Origin: Amphiscolops sp. MND2022
Taxonomy: Eukaryota
NCBI GenBank assembly: GCA_964187785.1
Contig: OZ076413.1
Coordinates: 47,120,001-47,184,000 of the forward strand
Direction of reading: 5' to 3'
DNA: 64,000 nt
The translations under genes and the position numbers were made by a program. Each line of letters starts with the position of its first letter. Position 1 is the first letter of the stretch. This document shows positions 51,480 through 63,660 of the stretch, piece after piece. Below the pieces are notes generated by a model. That model worked only from the letters and a program-made list of their open reading frames with translations, was not told the origin of the DNA and searched no databases.

Positions 51480-52402
51480 GATTGGTGTGTTTTTCTTTGG
51501 AAATTCGAACTCAAGATGACTTCAAGTGCTCGTCGGCGGGATTTTTTCTTATGTAGAATTTCGGTTATAAAATCATCCCGAGTCGTTGCAGCTGCCCTTC
51601 GTCGAATTTTTCCAAGCGTGCTTCCGAATGCTCAAAGATTGCAGAAACGCCTGCAATTGATCTGTTGAAACGAATCAGATAGAATTATGTTTCCGAAGAC
51701 ACATAAAAATCGCATACTAAATTTAGTTTTTCTCTGCCTCCAGAGTGGATCAAATACTTCGATCGCTTTCCAAAATAGCTCCTGAGTTTTTTACAGTGGT
51801 TTCGTGAAAATCTCTTTTGTAGTCATATCCACGGATCAGGTTCATTGCGGGCCCTGTCACCAAAGTTTGCAGATAGTCATCTTTTTGGCATTTGTCATGT
51901 CCGAGCTACCTACTGTGGCTGTGAAATGGGCAATTCATTTTATAAGCATTTCAGTGGATTTCCGTCGTACTCTTTAGGTTGACTGTCAGTAGTGACGGTT
52001 TGAATGATCTTGACATTGAACATGTGGTTGTTGTCGTTGAATTTGAAGCTTCTTGGGACATTTTTCGTAAAAGTTTCGCTTCAACAGTTTGATTTTGAAG
52101 AGTTGTGCTTGTTTTCGACGGTTTTCTTGAACTGAATAAATAGCTGTCGTACGTCATCTTGAGTGTTCTTATACTGCTCTGTATGTTCTTCGTGGACTGA
52201 AGATCTGTCGGACTTTACAATCATATCTTTTGTAGTTTTTTCTAGCTCTTTTAGCTTCGCATTAATTTCATGGATGATTTTTTCATTTTCGTCAATGCAC
52301 TTTCTCACAAAGTTTTGCGAGCTATTGATTTCTTTCCTGCTTAATAAGTTTCGCAACGCAATTTTTTCTTGCAGTTGCTCCTCTGCCTTTTTTGTTGACC
52401 AT
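51480..52402 (-). pseudogene. BEL/Pao gag remnant (coiled-coil N-terminus plus DUF1759-like capsid region)
   Basis: Coiled-coil ORF 52081-52356. With small frameshifts, 51975->51765 reads KEYDGNPLK..*IAHFTATVGSSDMTNAKKM.YLQTLVTGPAMNLIRGYDYKRDFHETTVK.LRSYFGK, matching the BEL/Pao gag pattern FDGNPLxWxxW..F..TV....K..YLQTLVTG.A...I.GY...Y..A...L...FG. Confidence 0.85.
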
Positions 52403-52587
52403 TTGTTCCAAGTAACTTGTTAAGTTCAATTCAGTTTCTCAGCGATTGTGTTTTAGATACTTGGTTCTTCAAACAAGAAAAATAAGGTTGACAAGAGTTC
52501 TCGACACTTTCTACAATTCGATTCCAACGTTAACCGTAGTTTCATGTTTGATTTTCAAAGTTTGAGTCTTGAAGAATTGTCAACTGT

Positions 52588-52605
52588 GTTCCCTGTTGGA
52601 CGCCA
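52588..52605 (-). other. tRNA-Lys-like primer-binding site of the BEL/Pao element
   Basis: Minus strand ...CCCCATACA-TTC-TGGCGTCCAACAGGGAAC, i.e. CA end, 3 nt spacer, then an 18-mer close to the tRNA-Lys3 PBS TGGCGCCCGAACAGGGAC, ~190 bp upstream of the gag start. Confidence 0.72.
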
Positions 52606-52608
52606 GAA

Positions 52609-52830
52609 TGTATGGGGAATTTTGTTCTAATTGGAATAAAGGGGGAAAATGTCCTATCTCTCAAATAAAGAAAGGTCTATTTTAAGGTCTTTTTTGGAGT
52701 TTGGCGTGGCTTGAAGAACTGGATGTGAGTCGCATAAACAACCTGACGTTAATTTATTAACAAACTTCATGAGTCAAAGAGTCTTTCACGACCTTTGAAA
52801 AATGGTAAAATTAGGCAAACTTGTAGACAA
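52609..52830 (-). repeat. Probable 5' LTR of the BEL/Pao element (outer boundary uncertain)
   Basis: Ends in CA immediately before the PBS; minus-strand AATAAA at 52753-52758. No partner LTR found in the window, so the length is a guess. Confidence 0.42.
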
Positions 52831-53200: not shown

Positions 53201-55008
53201 TTCTTAACTGCTTCTTTCATAAAACTACTTTCGCACGAGTTTGTTCAATTTGATTGCATCTGATTGCTGATTGCGGATCGACTGCAGTAATCTGCATCGA
53301 TGCTAAAACCCTATTCTGTACTTTCAGAATTCTCCTAATTGTTTAGGGCGCTCACTTGTTGCTTGCGGGCACATTATCGTTGACTAACTCCGTTGTTATG
53401 ATTCAACAATTTCCGGAATTTCAGCTTTTCGATGTGAGTTATTTTGCGGCTGTGACCACTAGAACCCATTTTTTAGCCACCAGTTAATCTCTTCTGAATC
53501 AGGAAATATGTTGTTTTACTGTTCGCTCGGACACATCATAACAGTCCAGGAGAGATGCAACATATTTCGCTCCTATGTCCGTATTTTTGCCACAAAATGC
53601 CCATGGTAGTTCCAAGTTTTTTCCCAGATATCTTCTAATCATCGTCATCCATTATTTGAATTGATTTGCCAAGATAAAAATCAAAGCTTTCGAAATGTTG
53701 AAATAAAAACCGGAAATGAAAAGTTTTTACGTCCTTAATGTTCAGATTTTTTTGCTGCCACATACCTCATCATCAGGTCGACCAATTTTTTGACAGTATT
53801 TTTCATTTGAATGATGGTCGGTTTTCACATCTAACCGGTCCGGTGACATCTCAGTTACTGTTGCGTGTCTAAAAAATTCTACTAAAAGTGTTCTTTGTTA
53901 ACCTGTTGTTAACCTCATGAGTGCTACTGAACTGTTTCTCAGGTGTTGAAGCGCCGTTTAGGTGTGTTAATCGAAGTCGGCGCGGAATATGATTCCCTGG
54001 TGTTTGATACCATACGCTACCACGTGAGAAACCTTTTCCTCATCGATCGAAATAGTCATGGAACGGTTTAACTTGGAGTTTCCATCCGTATGTGGGTATG
54101 CCCAACTATAATACCAAATATGCTTTAAAAAGAGAATCAACGTTCGTCTCAAAAAAGCTTCATAATGCTCTGTGTGCAGGAGTAGGGTGTTGATGTAGTT
54201 CTGCATTACTTTAACCATCGGCTTTCAATCTTGTTGTATTGACGGACTGTCCATCTGCATCATTCAGTTTTTGATGGGTGACCAATTTCAAGATAGGAAT
54301 ATCAACATTTACTGTCTACAGCACCTCAGACACGAAATATTCTGACTTTTCCGTGCCTCTTCACTGCGGCAAATTTTGCTGATGGAAAATAGCCTGAAGA
54401 TCATCGTAGACTCTCCTTTTGAAATCATCTGTGTTAAAAACTAAGTTAATGCTCCCGGGAAATTCCTGGTCTAATTTTCTGGGACCCTTTAATCCAATTC
54501 CCATGGGATGCAATTTGAGTTTCCCTCTTGATGCCATTCTCTTGGCTGTCTCGCTGTGGATAAATGTTACGAGGATTTAAAAATGCTACAATGTATCAAC
54601 ATTAAGGTTTATGGTCTGTAACCGTTCTTTTTTGCTTGGTTGTTCACTTAGAATTTCGTTCTGATAAATAACTGATTAATACTGATACTAATGAACTTGT
54701 TATTTTCACAGTTGACAATATATATCAAGTTGCGTTGGGGACCAGGCTTTAGACTACTGCCTCAATCCTTTTACGGAACTGTAAATTCGAGTCACTGAGT
54801 GACCCTGGTTTTGTGAAAAATACTGCTCCCATTTACTGTGTTGTTAAAACCCAGTTTCGATGCTTAATATACAGATACTTTTACGGGCGCGATCAATATT
54901 TCTGCATTTTTCTCTGCTCAGACTTCGTCCCAAACAGTACTTGTACTCGTAATTTGAAGATTTCAAAAATGAAAGTTCATTGTCTTTTCAGTTTGATCCT
55001 GTATCTAA

Positions 55009-55333
55009 ATGGATGTCCAGTACGGCTCTGCTCGACGGACTCCAGCTCCGCGCCATTCCACCACTGCAGCCAATCGCATACCACTTGGTTCGCGCCCTCA
55101 AACACCAAGTTTTGGCGGAGGCAACCTCATTCCACCTATGCCCCCAAGTCCGAATAGGCCCCAGATGGGAGCAATGGGAATGGACCCCAGGGGTATGAGA
55201 ACCCCTACTGCGAGACCTCAATTGGGTCAACCACCTCGTCCGCTTCTAGTATCACCAGTCTACGGCAATGCCACTCCGGGTGGAGGAGCAGGAGTTAGAC
55301 CAAATATGGGCAATCGTGCCTCCTACCCACAAG
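55009..55333 (+). CDS. Coding exon 1 of large multi-zinc-finger protein (Pro/Gly/Met-rich N-terminus)
   Basis: ATG at 55009 preceded by in-frame stops; acceptor at 54990-54991 implies an upstream UTR exon. Donor CAAG|GTTGGA at 55333/55334 is phase 1 and joins 56280 in frame (PQ-G-SPSFG); composition continues seamlessly. Confidence 0.82.
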
Positions 55334-55773
55334 GTTGGATCATTTTTATAAAAAAACTGCACTTCCATTATTTCAATAACAGAATGAGACTAATGACTTA
55401 GGAATCAATCATCTTTATTTTTCGTTATCTGAGGGGATTTTTTGGATTCCTTTCCTCCACCATTTTTTGCCAACAGAATGTACTTTCCACTGGAACTAGA
55501 GGTTGAGGCGAGTTTCTGTGAGTGATGAGTGAGTTCGGAAATCTAGAGGGTAGACCAAATTTTCCAGTTTTGGAAATTTTTCGGCACTGTGCGACTCACC
55601 AAAGAATTTTCCAACACTTTTTTTCAAGACAATTTTTGTGTTTTGAGGTTTCCTGTTTACAAAACACGTTTTCTTAACCTAAAAGGTCACACCTCTGGGT
55701 AATTGCGACACACTATTTCTGGAAATAGTTTTAGTCGTTTCCTTCATTTAAAATTTTCAAGCAATTCTCATCT

Positions 55774-55899
55774 GAGATATACGATCATTTGCTAAGATAT
55801 CTGTCCGGACTGATTACATCAAATCTCCGGATACCGGGTCGACATCTTGCTGAAATCTGGCCGGATTCGGGACCGGACTTGATGTCCGATACACCCCTA
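55774..55899 (-). mobile_element. hAT-like terminal fragment in the intron
   Basis: Minus strand begins TAGGGGTG; ATCCGG-rich; homologous to 9588-9683. Confidence 0.45.
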
Positions 55900-56279
55900 G
55901 TTGTCATGTTTGGAACTTGTGGAATGAACGATGGAATAGCTATTTTTTGTGGCTCCCATCTGAAAAATTTATAGTGGGCGCTTTGTGAAACAGAACGAAA
56001 ATTCTGCAATACCTCTAAGATCTAAGGAGGAGCAAAGAGATTTAAAGGGTCCTCCCATTCATTTCTTCGAAAATATTTGTTAAAGTTTCAGACTTGGAAA
56101 GAATTGTTCCTTTTGGTGGCACGCCAATCATTTTGGAGTTTGATTTTTACTTCCAAAATTTAATGGCATAAGTGGTCAGAAAAACAAATTTTTATCTATC
56201 TTCGCGCCTATTGAAAGTTTTTTCTGCTACACTTATGATCAATAACGTTTCTGTTAAATTTTCTTATGCGTGCTTTTAG

Positions 56280-59200
56280 GTTCACCATCGTTTGGTAACT
56301 ATGGACCTCCAACTCCTATGCGTAGCATTGGGCCACCTGGTAGCCAGAATATAGCTCAATTCCCTCAAGCTTCTAATAACATGACACCCATGATGCCACC
56401 TCGTAGTGCTCCTGCGCCTAGACCTTATATGCAAAATGCGATCACTCCTAGGCCTTACGCACAAGGTGCCCCTCGTACAACGACTCCATACATGCAAAGT
56501 GGCACTGCAGTTCAAATTGAACCAATGCCTCAAGAGTTTTTCAAAATTCCTGGTTTCCCGCCTCCACCAAAACCCGTTGCAGCATCGGAGCAGAAACCAC
56601 AGAACACTCTTCAAAGTTACGGTAGCTCCCGTCAACAAGGATCTGAAGTTGAATCCCCAAAGAAGAAAGAAGAACCAGTGGGAATGATTGATATTGAAAA
56701 GTACAGTAAGTTAGTTGGATGGGATCGGCTCTCCAGAGCTCCAGATGATGTTGTCGTTGGACTTCTCAACGCTATCTACGACAGCGTAACTGAAATGTCA
56801 GATTTGACATCTGAGAAGAGAATTCATGAGCTTGTCAAACTCTTGAAAGAGTATCTAACCTTGCTTCTGGTTCCAACTTTTGAGTTTCAGAAGTACTTCG
56901 AGCAGTATTTGAACAGACTCATCAAAGATCAGAACTGGATCTCAATGACTACAGCCCAAGCTCTGTGCATTTCAGTGGCAACTCCTGATGATGATTCACG
57001 CTTGAATAAAGTGAACCGAAAGTTTTTCTGCAGTTATTGTACTCTCAGCTACAGCTCTGCCAAGTTCACCTGTAAGTTCTGCTTGGCATCCTTTAAGCAC
57101 GTATCCGATTTGCAAGCTCACGAATTCGAAGCCCATAACAAGCTGAGTTCATTTCTGTTTGTTTGCGAAATATGTCAGCAAAGTTTCCCTCAAAATCCAA
57201 TGCAGTTGCGTGATCACATGTATGAACGACATATTTGTTCCCGCAAACATTTCGAGTGCCCGTATGGATGCGAAAAGCTTATCTTGGAAATGAGTCAGCA
57301 TTCGTATAAGGATCACATCAAAGCTGTGCATCAATGCTCTAAATGTAAAGACGTAGTTCAAGGAAGCATGGATGAACATAACAAAATGTTCCATAACGAG
57401 GAAAGAGCTAGGAAGAGGTCCCCAAGTCCGGATAGAAGAAAGCAGGATGAAAGCAGGTTATCTCAAGGTTCACACAGTCGAGATAGACACAAGCATGGTT
57501 CTGAACGATCGCATAGACTGATTGAACGAGAACCATCAGATCGGGGTTATGATAGAGATCGAGACTTCAACAGAGGCAGAGGCATGGAAAGAAGCCGTGA
57601 CTACGATGAATACGAGGATAAAATGAAACATGCTTCCCGAGGTATGGAAGGCAGCCGACGGTACGATGATATTGAGGAGAGACAGATGTCACCGCCCAGA
57701 ATGATAGGGTCTAGCCGAAGAACGAGAGGCACTGAAGGCTTTGAAAAGTTCAATACTAGTACGATCGATGACACTGAACTTGCCAAAGCACAGCAGACGC
57801 TCAGAGAAATGCAGCGGGCTAAAGAACTTTTGGAAGCGTCCGAGAACAGTTTCCAGAATGAAATGGAACGCTTTGATTACGTAGATCCCCCAGGGAAAGG
57901 AACGTGGCCGCAATGCAAAACGTGCAAACTGCAGCAACCACCGGGAGGTTTTAAGTGTACGAAGTGCAATTTAGTGCTGTCTCATCGCGTCTTCTTGTTC
58001 AAGCACATGCAGGAGGTTCACAAAATGCTGATGCCCAATTCGTTTGAGTGTGAAATGTGCCCCAAAGTGTTCTCCAGTCTGAGTATCTTGGTTTATCATG
58101 TAAACAAAGAGGCGCATGCATGTACGAGCGATCATCTCCAGTGTACTTATGGCTGTCTCAATTTGTTTCAAAACAAGCATTCTTTGGATGCGCATACTAA
58201 CGCGAAACATGAGTTCATGTGTCATATATGCGAGGCACCCGTCGTGAACCAAACTAAAAAGAGACATTTCGCAATCTACCACCCTGGGGAAAAGGTCACA
58301 GCACCCTCTGAACACCAGCAAACTCCGATGGAGCAAGTAGAAGTTGCCACTGCTGCGTCAACCCCTTCGCATAACGAAGCTGTTGGTAAATTCCCTAAAA
58401 CGTTAACTCTGGCACCTAGGACCCACAACAATATGAGGCAGTCATATTTGAATCTAGCTAGTAACAGATTGGAAACTCTTCTCTTCATCCCCCCGCCTTT
58501 GTTGAATGACAAATCGTTTGCAAGCAAAACGAAGACTCAGTTGATCAACATGGGCTTCATGCATTGCCGATCATGTGAGATCATATACCATCCTGTGCTT
58601 GTGAGCTGCAAACTTTGTGGAGAAACATTACTCAACAACAATTGCTTGAACGAACATTTGGTGGAAGTGCATAAGCAAAAAGAAATGGTGGGCTTCAAGG
58701 AGTGTGCGGTGATGCAATGTGGCGCTAAACTGCCGAACTATAAGATGTTGATAAACCACCAAGTTGAGCATTTCTGCAGAGAGCATACGGAATGTCCTTT
58801 TGGATGCAAGCAATTGATCGCGGGCAGTGAGTCAGCTGTAGTTCAACACTGCATCCAAGGTCACCCCAATAAGGAGATTCCCAAGTTTTCAACTACATCA
58901 TCTGAGCGAGAACGTCAGGACAATGATTTTGTTGATAGGAACACTGAATATGTCAGCTTGAACAAGCTTCATAAGGAATCGGAGCAGCAATCCAGGTCGC
59001 TTGATCAATCAAGTGACATGGACTTCGATGTGTGTCTCAAATGCATAACTTGCAGTTTCATGTGTTTCGAAGACAGTATGAGAACGTGTGATGTATGTCC
59101 TGCTGATAATTCCTTCAAATGCGGCGATCTTGACGAACTCAAATGGCATTTAGCCAGTTTTCACGATTTATTCATGCAAGGCGAGTTTGTATGTGTCCCA

Positions 59201-62200
59201 TGTACCAAAAAAAATCATGCCCCGGTCAAATTCACTGATGACGTAATGAGGTTTTTGGACCATCGACATAAAGCCCATGGAGTGTGTAAAGTTCATGAAC
59301 GGTGTTCTAATTCACCGTGCACTGCTATTTTTGACCCAAAATCTCCAGATGCTGAAAGGCACGTCAAGTTCTTGTGCCAATTCATCAAGGAAACCACTCA
59401 ACCGAAAATTTCGGAAGGCGTTGCTTTGGAATGTACTCGATGGAGCATGTGTGTCAAGTGCAAGTTCACAGCCGAGATTACAAAAGCGTATGAGTGCATC
59501 AACTGTGAAAAACCAAAAACGTTCTACGTGAGAGAAGAGTACTATGCTCATCTTGTAACTGCACATTCCTGGAAAACAGAGCATATTTTTTCGTGTTTTG
59601 TTTGCAACTCGCAGTTTGGAAGCAATGCCAAAGCCTGGTTGAGTCATAGACAACAGAACAAATCTCATAGTATGTGTGACCAGCATGTAATATGCGACTC
59701 TACGGACTGCATTTGGATGGCCCCAAATCGCAGTGAAATTGAAACACATCGAAGAGCTCAAAAATGCCAAGATCACAAGCTTGATGGCATAATCCGGGAC
59801 ACTAAAATTTGCCATGTTTGCTCTCAGATTTTCTCAGACGGAGTGATCTTTCAATGTGTGCTTTGTTTGAAAAACAAGCAACAATTTGTGTCCGTTCTAG
59901 AGTACTTGGTTCACATCGAAAACATCCATGACCGAAAGATTGCTGGGAACTTCGATTGTCTGGAATGCCGATCTTACACCGCTCTGAGTCCTTATGAGCT
60001 TTCAAGGCACAACTATACCAAACATAAAAAGTGCCAATCTCACAAGTTCTGTCCAAACAGCTCGAAATGCCCCGTTATGTTTCCTTTCGAGAGCTACAAC
60101 ATGATGCATCAATGTACGTTTGTGAATGAGTCACCAATCAAATCTTTGGCAGAGTCCCCTTCCAAATCGCAAAGCGGCAGACAAGTCAGCGTTTGCACTT
60201 CCCTCTCAGATGCAAGGAAATTGACTACTGTAGAAATGGACGTGCAGGATAATGGAAACGACACTCAATCTAAATCTATCATAATCTCGAAGATCAATGA
60301 TAAAGCTGTGGATCCAATCGATTCCCCCGGAAAAAGCGAGAGCCGAACTTTGGGAAGTAATGCGAGATTTTCCGGCGACTCTAGTAAATTTTTTGAAGGC
60401 ATTGGGGCACCAACACATAAGCCCTCAGAGCCAGTAAAAGTTATTAGAATTTTGCCAAAAACTATAATAAACATCGACGATGATAGCCCTGACGACGAGA
60501 AAGAAAAGTGTCGGGAGAAAGAAAAGTGTCGGGAGAAAGTAAAGGAAACTGTCAGTGACGGCGAAACCCGTCTTCCTGATCGATATCAAATTGCTAAAGA
60601 AGGCAAAAGTAAGTTGTATGTTTGCAGCCATTGTAATTACAGGTCCATCTTACCGCCGCCCGGGAAGTTCAAAGGGGATATGAAGTGCAAGCAAAGAAAT
60701 TGTGGCTTGATCTTCCATCAAAAATTCGAACTTGTTTCTCACTTGGAATTGGCCCATGACAAACCTCTGCCCCCTGTAAAGTTCAAAATAACATGTGAGT
60801 TCTGCAGAGATGAGAAAGTGGCCGTTCCATTCGCTCACAATCTCAGCATCCCGCTTTGTGAGCATAGAAAGTTGGTGCATGGATGCTGCAGAACTCATAT
60901 AGTTTGCCCTGTCGAGAACTGTTCGACTCTTCTACCGACTCGAGATGCTTTGGAGAAACACAAGAAAGAAGATTGCTGTGAAACTTTGTATGTCGCTCTG
61001 GAAGGCGAGCCCTCTAGTTCCGAGAAATTGGATTCGTGGAAAAAACAAGTTAAGTCTAACAGTTCCGAAAAAATCGATTCATGGGGAAAACGAGGCGAGT
61101 CCACAAGCTCCGAAAAATCGGATTCTTGGTCGAAACGAGGTGAATCTTTGTCCGCATGGAAGAAATCGAAGCCTTCTTCGGATAATCCCCAAGTAATTGA
61201 CATTGATGATGATATACCGCCTCCTCCGAAACTGATTGACATCAAGACTAGTAAAATAGAAACTTTAGTTCTCAAATACGGATCTAAAGATTCTCAGCCT
61301 TTCAAACTGTTTGAGTGTCTCGAATGTGCTCGTAAGTTTGCTTGCATGACTATATACCGTTGTAATCAATGCCCTGACAGCATTTCCCTGTCATCTAGAT
61401 CTTTTGTGAATCTAGTTGAGTTCTTTGCTCATTTAAAGGATGTTCACAAAATAGACACGGAAATTGAACACTCATGTGCTTTATGCAGCTCTTTCCGTGG
61501 ACCCGCGTACAATCTTCAAAAACATGTGGAGCAACGTCATAGAGTATGTGGTCATCATTTCCTGTGTCCCAATATGTGCAAGTATCTCTTCGATGACAAG
61601 CAAAAGCTGTTGGACCATATTCAGAGCGGAACATGCCAGGGTCCTTCAAGCTCGCCATCTAGCGGTGATAAAAGGAAAGGGGCTGATGTGTTCTATGAAG
61701 AAGACGCCCCAGTCCCAAAGAAAGTATTCGAAAGAGTGGGTACTAAAAAGGAAAACGAGATAAGTCGCTCAAAACGTTCTGCTGAGAAAGGCGGTTCTAA
61801 CAAGCCGCCCGCCAAATGGGACGACATGATGGCAAATATTGTGGCGGATATTGATGGGTTTTGGAGTGACGAAGATGGAACGGAAGTTGCTAGAGATGAG
61901 ACGGATAAAATGTCTAGCCTTGTTGAAGAAATGAAGAACAAGGAGATGGAAGTAACGGAAGAAGAAAAAGCTGACAAGGACTCTCCGAAATCTGACACAA
62001 AGAATGACGAAGCAGAGAATATCGAAGAAATGGATCCTCAAAAAATTGTACTCGTGGAAGAGGAATCTCCTGTGAAACCTGTTGTTGTTTGCACCAAACC
62101 AGAAGATACCGAGGACGCTGGGAACGATGAAATAACTGAAAACAATGACGTTAATAATGAAACGGAAGAGAATAACCACGAGCAAACGGATGAAACTGAA

Positions 62201-62437
62201 ATGCAGGATGTTGATGATGAACAGGAGGACACTACTGAGAAACAGCTCGAAGAAGAGGAGGAAGACAGCGAACCCGAAGAAGAAGAGGACGTGGTTTATG
62301 AGGAGAATTCTGAGAGTGACGTCATTAAACCTGGAAGTAACAGAATGACGTCGTGCGCTTCTGCTGAAGACAATCCTGATGATTTAATCATTGATCCTCA
62401 GACAGAAGATGAAGCATTTACTGTCGAGTTTTCGTAA
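56280..62437 (+). CDS. Coding exon 2 (6158 bp) of ~2160 aa multi-zinc-finger protein with eight composite Zn modules, Arg/Asp-rich linker and acidic tail
   Basis: Uninterrupted 2055-codon frame; acceptor TGCTTTTAG ends at 56279. Repeated CxxC..HxxxxH fingers. Joined CDS 55009-55333 + 56280-62437 = 6483 nt = 2160 aa + stop. No specific ortholog recognised. Confidence 0.93.
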
Positions 62438-62739: not shown

Positions 62740-62745
62740 AATAAA
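62740..62745 (+). terminator. Candidate polyadenylation signal of the zinc-finger gene
   Basis: AATAAA ~300 bp after the stop, followed by T/GT-rich sequence. Confidence 0.45.
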
Positions 62746-63344
62746 ATGTTTCCTGTTCTTGCTCATTTTGCAGGTAGAATGCTACTATTCAAGAAGTTCT
62801 TCAATGTTTGATTAAATATCCGTTTCAAACTACTTTTCAATGGGTTAACTTTTCAATTATATTTACTGAATATAAAAACTGTATTTGTTGAAAACTAATT
62901 CCTGTCGACTAATTCAATATTTCCTGTTGATCCCTTTTTCCTTGGGGATTTTTTGTTTTTACTCATTCAAAAATGTATTGCGGTGGTATATCGTACATTG
63001 TTCACATTGTTGGCTCTTTGAAATACTTTCAGAATTATTGTTCGGGGAATACACTATCTTTTCGGTTTATCAATTGTATCAAACTGGTATCAGAGGCAAT
63101 GTGAATCCCTTCCTGTATATAGGAACATCTGGTGTCAATATTGAATTGAATACCTGTTGCAACTTTCTAGAGTAGAAAAACGCTCGCATTTTCACTTCTA
63201 ACTCAATCCTCAAGTTTTAGAAAATCGATTTGTACGGGGTTTTTCCCAAGTTCTCACAACCACGGGCGCATTTATTATGTCTTGGTGAATCCTTAGTTGT
63301 CAGTCAATTTAAAAGTCCCATTCTGTGAAAATTTTTCAGTTGCA

Positions 63345-63605
63345 ATGGAAAACCTGGGGTTCCAGGAAGAGGAGCAAGTGGATGGACAACTTGAGTTGAA
63401 TGTTTCGATTGACAGCCAATCGGAAAGCAAGCAAAATTCGAATCTTGCGGAATGTTCTGTGGATCTTGGAAGCAAAGGTGCTATCCCCAAAAAGAGCACT
63501 CAAGTACGTAGGAGGGAGCCGAGGATGATTCACTGCCGGGATGGGGTAATTTCGGAAGACGAGATTGGTAAACTGTACGAGCAATTTGACGAGCCCTTGT
63601 CGAAG
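63345..63605 (+). CDS. First coding exon of a possible FAM177-like protein
   Basis: Acceptor TTTTTCAG (63338-39), ATG at 63345, donor AAG|GTTAGC (phase 0). Peptide ...SVDLGSKG..KK..RRREPRMIHCRDGVISEDE resembles the FAM177 motif VELG..KK.PRR.IHF.DG..EEY..DE. Confidence 0.5.
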
Positions 63606-63660
63606 GTTAGCTTTATTTTTTGCTGACTTCCCATAATCATGTTTTAGTAAATACTTTGTT

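What the first reader, a model, noticed from the sequence alone, without database searches (positions are those of the whole stretch)
55009..62437. Giant zinc-finger protein made of eight copies of an unusual ~110 aa four-zinc module
Seen: eight modules starting near 57023, 57914, 58562, 59039, 59447, 59807, 60619 and 61313. Each has the same ligand order: orphan CxxC - C2H2 finger - C2H2 finger - xCxxH - C(P)x2-4C..H..H/C (e.g. module 8: CLEC..CNQC..HLKDVH..CALC..HVEQRH.VCGHHFLCPNMC..HIQSGTC). Inference: the orphan N-terminal CxxC and the CxxH after the second finger may form a fourth Zn site clamping two fingers into one rigid unit; the tail resembles TRAF/SIAH-type fingers. Linkers are not canonical TGEKP and sequence identity between modules is low, so this looks like an old repeated domain rather than an ordinary C2H2 array.
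Basis: partly seen in the sequence, partly recalled or inferred. Interest (0 to 1): 0.7.

Follow-up and report, generated by a model that had tools for sequence, protein, structure and literature searches.

The report
Acoel protein with eight four-zinc modules
This gene of an acoel flatworm-like animal encodes a 2,160-residue protein made of eight copies of a roughly 105-residue unit of three ordinary zinc fingers plus four extra conserved metal ligands; the unit defines a gene family seen so far only in acoels and absent from Pfam.

Summary
Each module has the same 16 Cys/His in the same order; 2,000 composition-preserving shuffles gave none.

Each module has four parts:
- an N-terminal CxxC knuckle (K);
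- two C2H2 fingers (A, B);
- a Cx2-3H motif (J) that occupies the place and length of the canonical TGEKP linker;
- a third finger, Cx3-5C..H..C/H.

No Pfam family covers the module, and no solved or predicted structure matches it as a whole. Only single fingers match.

A profile search of 1.84 billion proteins found about 20 clusters with the full module. Every named one is from an acoel (Convolutriloba macropyga, Symsagittifera roscoffensis). The window's genome has at least nine such loci. Paralogues keep the modules in the same order behind a shared, unannotated N-terminal helical domain, so the array is old.

K and J sharing a fourth zinc is supported only indirectly: 2+2 leftover ligands, 134 of 146 modules with both intact, and the one module that lost K also lost J. 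No coordinates were available.

The TRAF/SIAH resemblance is not supported. Function is unknown; I infer a nuclear nucleic-acid or chromatin binder. This is a new variant of a known kind, of moderate interest.

The parts
55009..55333 (+). Exon 1: ATG plus 108 codons and 1 base, a Pro/Gly/Met-rich low-complexity N-terminus
   Evidence: ORF. Donor CAAG|GTTGG. Residues 2-30 are homologous to the N-terminus of the C. macropyga orthologue P0002.
55334..56279 (+). Intron (GT...AG, 946 nt), inferred
   Evidence: The join is in frame. All four indel polymorphisms seen in the public DNA contigs over 54900-57400 fall inside it, and none falls in the exons. No RNA evidence.
56280..62437 (+). Exon 2, including the stop codon; it holds all folded domains
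   Evidence: P0001 is a 99% identical allele.
56717..57004 (+). N-terminal helical domain shared by the whole family; no known relative
   Evidence: phmmer finds it in the paralogues. Alignment A2. AF2 pLDDT 84.6 with five helices. No significant Pfam, PDB or atlas match. 78-80% identical to the orthologues.
57029..57331 (+). Module 1 (K, A, B, J = Cx3H, C finger ending in His)
   Evidence: AF2 model with pLDDT 78 shows three beta-beta-alpha units.
57335..57394 (+). Extra short C2H2 finger behind module 1
57395..57913 (+). Arg/Ser/Asp/Glu-rich disordered linker (RS/RD-like)
   Evidence: 38 K+R, 37 D+E and 18 S in 173 residues. 27-31% identical to the orthologues, with gaps.
57914..58210 (+). 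Module 2
   Evidence: It is the only module that reaches the zf-C2H2 gathering score (25.2 bits). Its J motif aligns to the TGERPFQ linker of CTCF at equal length.
58220..58282 (+). Extra short C2H2 finger behind module 2
58565..58864 (+). Module 3
59042..59377 (+). Module 4
59450..59767 (+). Module 5 (highest profile score)
59810..60115 (+). Module 6
60623..60979 (+). Module 7
61316..61636 (+). Module 8
61637..62434 (+). Acidic C-terminal tail (net charge -58) ending in FTVEFS, as in the orthologues

Best explanation
The locus is a two-exon gene for a 2,160-aa protein of a multigene family so far seen only in acoels.

**Architecture.** A disordered N-terminus is followed by a family-specific helical domain. 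Then come eight (ancestrally about ten) modules of 99-119 aa, separated by disordered linkers, one of them RS/RD-like. The protein ends in a strongly acidic tail.

**The module.** Each module is a triple beta-beta-alpha zinc finger (C2H2, C2H2, C2H[C/H]). Four further conserved ligands lie outside the fingers. Two are a CxxC knuckle 10-17 residues before finger A. The other two are a Cx2-3H motif that replaces the TGEKP linker between fingers B and C, at the same length.

**Inferred mechanism.** These four ligands bind a fourth zinc (a C2CH site). That zinc staples the module's N-terminus to the B-C linker, closes fingers A and B into a metal-locked loop, and fixes the orientation of finger C. 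Each module would then be one rigid four-zinc body rather than three beads on a string.

**Inferred function.** A nuclear protein that reads nucleic acid or chromatin, or scaffolds protein partners, through an array of such rigid heads.

**Shown versus inferred.** Shown: the modules, their conservation, their family and its taxonomic range, and the three-finger secondary structure. Inferred: the fourth zinc site and the function.
For: **Ligand conservation**
- The 16-ligand pattern occurs 8 times in the window protein and 0 times in 2,000 shuffles.
- There are 13 invariant Cys/His columns across 27 orthologous modules.
- Over 146 modules of 22 family proteins, each ligand column is 91-100% conserved. 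The exceptions are the J Cys, which shifts by one column, and the last ligand, which is C or H.

**Fingers**
- The AF2 model of module 1 shows three hairpin-plus-helix units at the expected places.
- Foldseek and sequence profiles match them to classical C2H2 fingers only, one finger at a time. The TM-score for the whole module is 0.25-0.34.

**The J motif**
- J sits exactly 2 residues before finger C in 90 of 90 parsed paralogue modules, and 1-2 residues after finger B in 89 of them (0 in one).
- In module 2 it aligns residue for residue with CTCF's TGERPFQ linker.
- It is diagnostic of the family: 0 matches in 207,924 residues of the non-family poly-zinc-finger hits.

**K-J coupling**
- 134 of 146 modules have K and J intact.
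- 7 have lost only the J Cys, 6 of them in one module lineage.
- 1 (P0008:1020-1142) has lost both K Cys and both J ligands while its three fingers remain.
- The 4 apparent K losses are Cx4-5C variants or a truncated protein.

**Family**
- Per-domain scores are 30-100 bits over profile positions 2-107 in about 20 clusters. Ordinary zinc-finger arrays score 11-26 bits.
- Every named member is from an acoel.
- The window's genome has at least nine loci.
- Module order is collinear among paralogues.

**Selection**
- Modules and the N-domain are 46-80% identical to the orthologues without gaps. Linkers and tails are 19-53% identical, with gaps.
Against: - No atomic model with metal was available, so K-J zinc sharing is not shown.
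- AF2 confidence is lowest at K (pLDDT 69) and around J (68).
- Splitting module 5 into K+A and B+J+C and co-folding them with zinc gave no verdict (ipSAE 0.02).
- Seven modules keep K although the J Cys is gone, so the site can apparently tolerate three protein ligands, or K has a further role.
- Modules are nearly neutral (net charge -2 to +6), which is less basic than typical DNA-binding triple fingers, so DNA binding is a guess.
- No RNA-seq run holds the locus, so expression and the splice rest on homology.
- Only the best 150 of 22,812 profile hits were visible. Weakly similar or single-module relatives outside acoels cannot be excluded.
Confidence: 0.7

Rival explanations
1. It is an ordinary divergent C2H2 array with a different wiring of the extra ligands. 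The N-terminal CxxC pairs with finger A's CxxC as a C4 zinc ribbon (RanBP2-like). Finger A's two His then pair with the CxxH.
For: - The spacing CxxC-x10-17-CxxC is that of a zinc ribbon.
- The K region of module 2 plus finger A gives weak hits to Nup153 RanBP2-type fingers (E 0.07-1.1).
- Single modules give weak hits to C4 ribbon families such as zf-Sec23_Sec24 and zf-ChsH2.
- An aromatic residue often stands 3 residues before K.
Against: - These hits are at chance level.
- Finger A keeps the classical core signature F-x5-L-x2-H-x4-H (consensus).
- Finger A aligns as a whole to classical C2H2 fingers.
- AF2 models it as hairpin plus helix.
- In the module that lost K (P0008:1020), finger A's CxxC and both His are intact while J is gone. 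This fits K-J pairing, not K-A pairing.
Confidence: 0.12
2. Daisy-chain wiring: the knuckle of module n+1 shares a zinc with the CxxH of module n, linking neighbouring modules rather than closing each one.
For: Numbers of K and J are equal in every protein. Some modules follow each other closely: M5 to M6 are 14 residues apart and M4 to M5 are 24.
Against: - Most inter-module linkers are long (59-173 residues), disordered and poorly conserved.
- The first K and the last J of every protein would be unpaired, yet they are conserved.
- K and J were lost together within one module, P0008:1020-1142, while the following module keeps its K.
Confidence: 0.06
3. The module is a relative of TRAF/SIAH-type or Di19/KCMF1/RNF125-type finger clusters. 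These serve in ubiquitin-ligase adaptors by protein-protein contact, not nucleic-acid binding.
For: - Five of the eight tail fingers end in Cys (C2HC), as TRAF-type fingers do.
- zf-Di19 is the best non-generic Pfam hit. It matches 7 of 27 modules, best E 8.5e-05, over fingers A+B.
- KCMF1 chains appear at E 0.005.
- Modules are nearly neutral in charge.
Against: - All these matches are below the curated cut-offs: 17-19 bits against 27.5.
- No zf-TRAF or Sina match was found for any window module.
- There is no RING, ZZ or other ligase domain in the protein.
- The tail finger aligns to Cx4C C2H2 fingers of TFIIIA and GLI.
Confidence: 0.08

Closest known systems
Classical (Krueppel/TFIIIA-type) C2H2 zinc-finger arrays, e.g. 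TFIIIA, GLI, CTCF (Pfam PF00096, PF13894)
   Same: - Fingers A, B and C have the C-x2-5-C ... H-x3-5-H/C ligands, the F/L core and a predicted beta-beta-alpha shape.
- The distance from the last His of finger B to the first Cys of finger C equals that of a TGEKP-linked array.
   Different: - There are no TGEKP linkers.
- The B-C linker itself carries two metal ligands.
- A CxxC knuckle precedes finger A.
- Fingers come in fixed triplets separated by long disordered spacers.
- The whole protein scores only 12.9 bits against zf-C2H2_4, whose cut-off is 27.
Double-finger units: zf-Di19 (PF05605; KCMF1), ZNF451 pairs (PF23107/PF23108), ZNF512/ZNF512B pairs (PDB 2ctd, 2gqj)
   Same: Two C2H2 fingers about 30 residues apart with non-canonical linkers. 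There is weak sequence and structure similarity over fingers A+B.
   Different: All matches are sub-threshold. None covers the knuckle, the CxxH or the third finger.
THAP domain (C2CH: C-x2-4-C-x35-50-C-x2-H)
   Same: The leftover ligands have the same order and type: CxxC, then a long spacer, then CxxH. This comparison rests on my own knowledge of the THAP signature.
   Different: - The spacer here is about 62-80 residues and is filled by two complete fingers.
- No THAP Pfam match was found for any window module.
- The similarity lies in the ligand formula only.
TRAF-type / SIAH zinc fingers
   Same: C2HC ligand order in the third finger of modules 4-8.
   Different: No profile match. Modules 1-3 end in His. 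The best alignments are to Cx4C C2H2 fingers.

Membership tests
Classical C2H2 zinc finger (PF00096/PF13894) | Ligands C-x2-4-C-x12-H-x3-5-H with a conserved aromatic and Leu core | tested here: met
   The consensus of A1 shows C..C.....F....EL..HL...H for finger A, and the same ligand pattern for finger B. Profile alignments put them on TFIIIA, GLI and CTCF fingers. Spacings are often longer than 12 residues.
Classical C2H2 zinc finger (PF00096/PF13894) | Reaches Pfam's gathering score | tested here: inconclusive
   The whole protein scores 12.9 bits against a cut-off of 27. Of the isolated modules, only M2 reaches 25.2 bits, which equals the cut-off. 16 of 27 modules match at E of 1 or less.
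Classical C2H2 zinc finger (PF00096/PF13894) | Beta-beta-alpha fold | tested here: met
   The AF2 model of M1 has three hairpin-plus-helix units. Foldseek probability is 0.8-0.96 against C2H2 arrays, but TM-scores are only 0.25-0.34, so single fingers match and their arrangement does not.
Classical C2H2 zinc finger (PF00096/PF13894) | Tandem fingers joined by TGEKP-type linkers | tested here: not met
   There are 0 TGE[KR]P motifs in the protein. The B-C linker is x(1-2)-C-x(2-3)-H-xx.
TRAF-type / SIAH zinc finger (PF02176, PF03145) | Match to the family profile | tested here: not met
   No such family is listed for any of the 8 window modules at E up to 1 (M1) or up to 10 (M2-M8). HMMER's filters may drop very weak matches.
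TRAF-type / SIAH zinc finger (PF02176, PF03145) | C2HC ligand set | tested here: inconclusive
   The last ligand is Cys in M4-M8 and His in M1-M3. In the paralogues it is Cys in 68 modules and His in 22.
zf-Di19 / KCMF1-type double finger (PF05605) | Reaches the curated score over both fingers | tested here: not met
   17.4-18.8 bits against a cut-off of 27.5. 7 of 27 modules match at E of 1 or less.
ZNF451-type double finger (PF23107/PF23108) | Reaches the curated score | tested here: not met
   15-16 bits against cut-offs of 29-30.
THAP domain (PF05485) | C2CH ligands with a 35-50 residue spacer, and a match to the profile | tested here: not met
   The spacer from K to J is about 62-80 residues. 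No THAP hit was found for any window module.
RanBP2-type zinc finger | W-x-C-x2-C-x3-N-x6-C-x2-C and a significant match | tested here: not met
   Only M2 gives Nup153 hits, at E 0.07-1.1. The conserved Asn is absent.
Acoel four-zinc-module family (defined here; no public name) | Per-domain score above about 30 bits over positions 2-107 of profile A1, with K and J present, and the N-terminal helical domain A2 | tested here: met
   All 8 window modules score 55-90 bits, read from the P0001 rows, its 99% identical allele. The A2 domain is present and shared with the paralogues.

The most novel reading that the evidence does not exclude
The module is a previously undescribed composite zinc-binding fold. 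It would be a triple C2H2-type finger locked into one rigid body by a fourth C2CH zinc, whose ligands come from an N-terminal knuckle and from the inter-finger linker itself. It would have arisen and expanded (at least 9 genes per genome, up to 10 modules per protein) within Acoela or Xenacoelomorpha. It would also show a new way to fix finger geometry without DNA.
Probability: 0.5. Interest if true: 0.6.

Novelty: new variant of a known kind. Interest (0 to 1): 0.45.

Why it matters
In ordinary C2H2 arrays the fingers are flexible beads. Their linkers order only on binding DNA. Here the linker position is taken by two metal ligands whose only evident partner is a knuckle about 65 residues upstream. 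That would be a built-in metal staple fixing three fingers in one geometry.

If the structure confirms this, it adds a new supermodule to the zinc-finger repertoire. It would be useful for domain databases, which now leave these 1,000-3,000-aa proteins unannotated, and possibly for protein design.

It is also a clear case of a lineage-restricted gene family in acoels, whose genomes are only now being annotated. The shared unknown N-terminal domain and the collinear modules show that one ancestral protein of about ten modules gave rise to the whole family.

No function is known, so the biological importance is open.

Tried and rejected
- **Split-module co-fold.** Module 5 residues 1-46 against 47-112, with four Zn, scored ipSAE 0.02 and 0.01. 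The tool gave no verdict, so this is evidence neither way.
- **RNA evidence for the splice.** No run on record as RNA holds the locus. The four holders are DNA contigs that contain the intron and show no joints.
- **Whole-module fold search.**
  - Foldseek against the PDB gave best E 4.9e-03, TM 0.25-0.34 and rmsd about 10 Å.
  - VIA-align wide gave best Z 3.3.
  - The ESM-atlas shape search gave TM of 0.38 or less.
  - Only single C2H2 fingers matched.
- **Language-model atlas search of module 5.** It returned only generic small C2H2 proteins.
- **N-terminal helical domain.** There was no significant sequence match in the PDB (best E 0.017, a designed repeat protein) or in Pfam. Foldseek E was 1.7 or worse. 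VIA Z was 7.2 or less, on generic helical bundles and designed proteins. Atlas TM was 0.54 or less, on TetR-like bundles. I treat it as unassigned.
- **Literature search** (acoel, zinc finger, lineage-specific). The ten listed titles and abstract openings showed nothing on this family; no paper was read in full.
- **Two regex parsers of mine** mis-assigned the J motif. They were replaced by the parsers and (hmmalign columns). Their counts are not used.
- **TRAF/SIAH, THAP and RanBP2 readings.** Considered and rejected as membership claims (see the membership tests).
Full report
**What is there**

The window has eukaryotic composition, 37-44% GC. On the + strand an open frame of 2,055 codons runs from 56270 to 62437.

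Upstream, an ATG at 55009 opens 108 codons. They end at a donor, CAAG|GTTGG, with the exon's last base at 55333. An acceptor, TGCTTTTAG|GT, ends at 56279. The join is in frame and gives a 6,483-nt coding sequence of 2,160 aa.

The first 30 residues of exon 1 resemble the N-terminus of the Convolutriloba macropyga orthologue. In public DNA contigs of the same organism, all four indel differences over 54900-57400 lie inside the proposed intron. No RNA run holds the locus, so the splice is well founded but not confirmed.

**The organism and the orthologues**

The best relatives are as follows:

| Protein | Source | Identity to the window protein | Length |
|---|---|---|---|
| P0001 | ENA assembly, an allele | 99% | 2,049 aa |
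| P0002 | LOC142336381 of Convolutriloba macropyga, uncharacterized | 57% | 2,361 aa |
| P0003 | LOC134839362 of Symsagittifera roscoffensis, uncharacterized | 56% | 2,128 aa |

The window therefore comes from an acoel. Its assembly has 1.07 Gb, and the window is C5:47120001-47184000.

It matches ten times in the C. macropyga orthologue and nine times in the S. roscoffensis one, where a tenth copy is cut short in that gene model. It never matched in 2,000 shuffles.

Aligning the 27 modules gives 13 invariant Cys/His columns, although different modules are only 21-29% identical.

I name the parts as follows:
- K: a CxxC knuckle.
- A and B: two C2H2 fingers.
- J: a Cx2-3H motif.
- C: a finger of the form Cx3-5C..H..C/H.

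Modules 1 and 2 are each followed by one extra short C2H2 finger. There is no TGEKP-type linker anywhere.

The window species lacks two modules that both orthologues have, M6b and M7b. M6b is also present in paralogues, so it was lost here.

**What the module is made of**

AlphaFold2 on module 1, using the 27-row alignment, gave pLDDT 78 and pTM 0.63. It shows three hairpin-plus-helix units exactly where A, B and C lie.

Sequence profiles put A, B and C on ordinary fingers of TFIIIA, GLI, YY1, ZIC3 and CTCF. Finger C aligns with the Cx4C fingers of TFIIIA and GLI, not with TRAF or SIAH fingers.

No TRAF, Sina or THAP family appears for any window module, even at E up to 10. Pfam's best matches are generic C2H2 models and, below threshold, zf-Di19 and the ZNF451 double fingers. 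All of these cover A and/or B only.

No library gave a match to the module as a whole:
- Foldseek against the PDB: TM 0.25-0.34, rmsd about 10 Å.
- VIA-align wide: best Z 3.3.
- ESM atlas by shape: TM 0.38 or less.

**The two orphan ligand pairs**

J lies 1-2 residues after the last His of finger B in 89 of 90 parsed paralogue modules (0 in one), and exactly 2 residues before the first Cys of finger C in all 90.

In module 2 the alignment to CTCF sets H-ACTSDHLQ-C against H-TGERPFQC-type linkers of equal length. J is thus the canonical inter-finger linker turned into a metal-binding motif.

J is also the family's hallmark. It does not occur once in 207,924 residues of the ordinary poly-zinc-finger proteins that the profile also hit.

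Twelve of the sixteen ligands are accounted for by the three fingers. The four that remain, two Cys of K plus the Cys and His of J, are exactly one tetrahedral site.

Over 146 modules of 22 family proteins aligned to the profile:

| State of K and J | Modules | Note |
|---|---|---|
| K and J both intact | 134 | |
| J Cys lost; K and J His kept | 7 | 6 in one orthologous module lineage |
| K first Cys outside the aligned region | 4 | three are Cx4-5C variants; one is a truncated protein |
| Both K Cys and both J ligands lost | 1 | P0008:1020-1142; fingers A, B and C intact |

The knuckle is never lost while J stays whole, and the only full loss of either is a joint loss inside one module. This favours an intramodule K-J site. 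It argues against K pairing with finger A's CxxC as a zinc ribbon, and against a daisy chain between neighbouring modules.

It is still indirect. The structure tool returns no coordinates, AF2 is least sure at K and J (pLDDT 68-69), and the co-fold of the two halves of module 5 with zinc gave no verdict. I put the shared fourth zinc at about two in three.

**The family**

A profile of the 27 modules was scored against 1.84 billion representative proteins and gave 22,812 hits. They fall into two classes.

- About 20 clusters carry 4-10 full-length matches each, at 30-100 bits over profile positions 2-107, with K and J present.
- All the rest of the listed 150 are ordinary C2H2 arrays. They match at 11-26 bits per stretch, mostly from position 12 onward, and lack J.

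Every family cluster that carries a name is from S. roscoffensis or C. macropyga. The others are unnamed ENA gene calls. The window's own genome has at least nine loci with full modules, most in very long open frames. One of them lies only 3.5-7 kb upstream of the window.

Family members share a helical N-terminal domain of about 95 aa (window 56717-57004). Its model has pLDDT 84.6. It has no significant relative in Pfam, the PDB or the atlas.

Paralogues keep the modules in the same order as this gene. So an ancestral protein that already had about ten modules was duplicated.

Modules and the N-domain are 46-80% identical to the orthologues without gaps. Linkers and tails are 19-53% identical, with gaps.

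Limit: only the best 150 hits were visible. Weak or single-module relatives in other phyla cannot be excluded.

**How it probably works**

Shown:
- a conserved array of eight triple-finger units with four extra conserved ligands each;
- a shared N-terminal helical domain;
- an RS/RD-like linker and a very acidic tail, net charge -58.

Inferred:
- Each module binds four zinc ions.
- The fourth zinc ties the module's start to the B-C linker, so that A and B sit in a closed loop and C is held in a fixed pose.
- The protein is nuclear and uses these rigid heads to bind nucleic acid, chromatin or protein partners.

The near-neutral charge of the modules, -2 to +6, leaves the kind of target open.

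**Verdict**

The thing is a new variant of a known kind: C2H2-type fingers combined into an undescribed four-zinc supermodule. It sits in an unannotated family seen so far only in acoels.

Interest is moderate. It is structurally neat and testable, but it has no known function and no link to a standing open question.

Noticed in passing
G000:C5:47113242-47116466 (+), 3.5-7 kb upstream of the window start: A paralogue of the same family with an open frame of 1,437 aa and at least three full modules. It matches the P0013/P0159 cluster, which lies on the same ENA contig as P0001. The genome has at least nine family loci: one on C3, two on C5, two on C6, one on C7 and three on C8.
   Followed up: partly
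window 56717-57004: A family-specific N-terminal five-helix domain (conserved motif LTSEKRI...LIKDKNW). It has a confident AF2 model but no Pfam, PDB or atlas relative. Possibly an oligomerisation or partner-binding domain.
   Followed up: partly
window 55870-55900 (inside the intron): A word of about 30 nt with Logan contig depth of 350-690, against 35-70 beside it, and many short contigs ending there. Probably a piece of a high-copy repeat.
   Followed up: no
window about 60500-60540: An 18-nt unit coding EKEKCR stands twice in the window but once in the 99% identical allele P0001. This is an in-frame tandem-repeat polymorphism in the M6-M7 linker.
   Followed up: no
window 10000-52000: About 40 kb of very even composition (GC 0.37-0.39, AT skew about -0.16 to -0.23) between the two paralogues. 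Another note of the scan (s1-152391) reads its end at 51480-52830 as an LTR-like array end. Not examined here.
   Followed up: no
P0011:535-635, P0012:543-643, P0013:702-802, P0044:633-733, P0102:601-703: A module variant in which finger B reads C-x-C-C ... H-x5-6-C-x2-H. The second His of finger B is missing and an extra Cys sits in the knuckle. The ligand set may be rewired in this lineage.
   Followed up: no
window 63297-63626 (+): A 109-codon open frame downstream of the gene, after AATAAA-type signals at 62740 and 62811. Possibly the first exon of the next gene.
   Followed up: no
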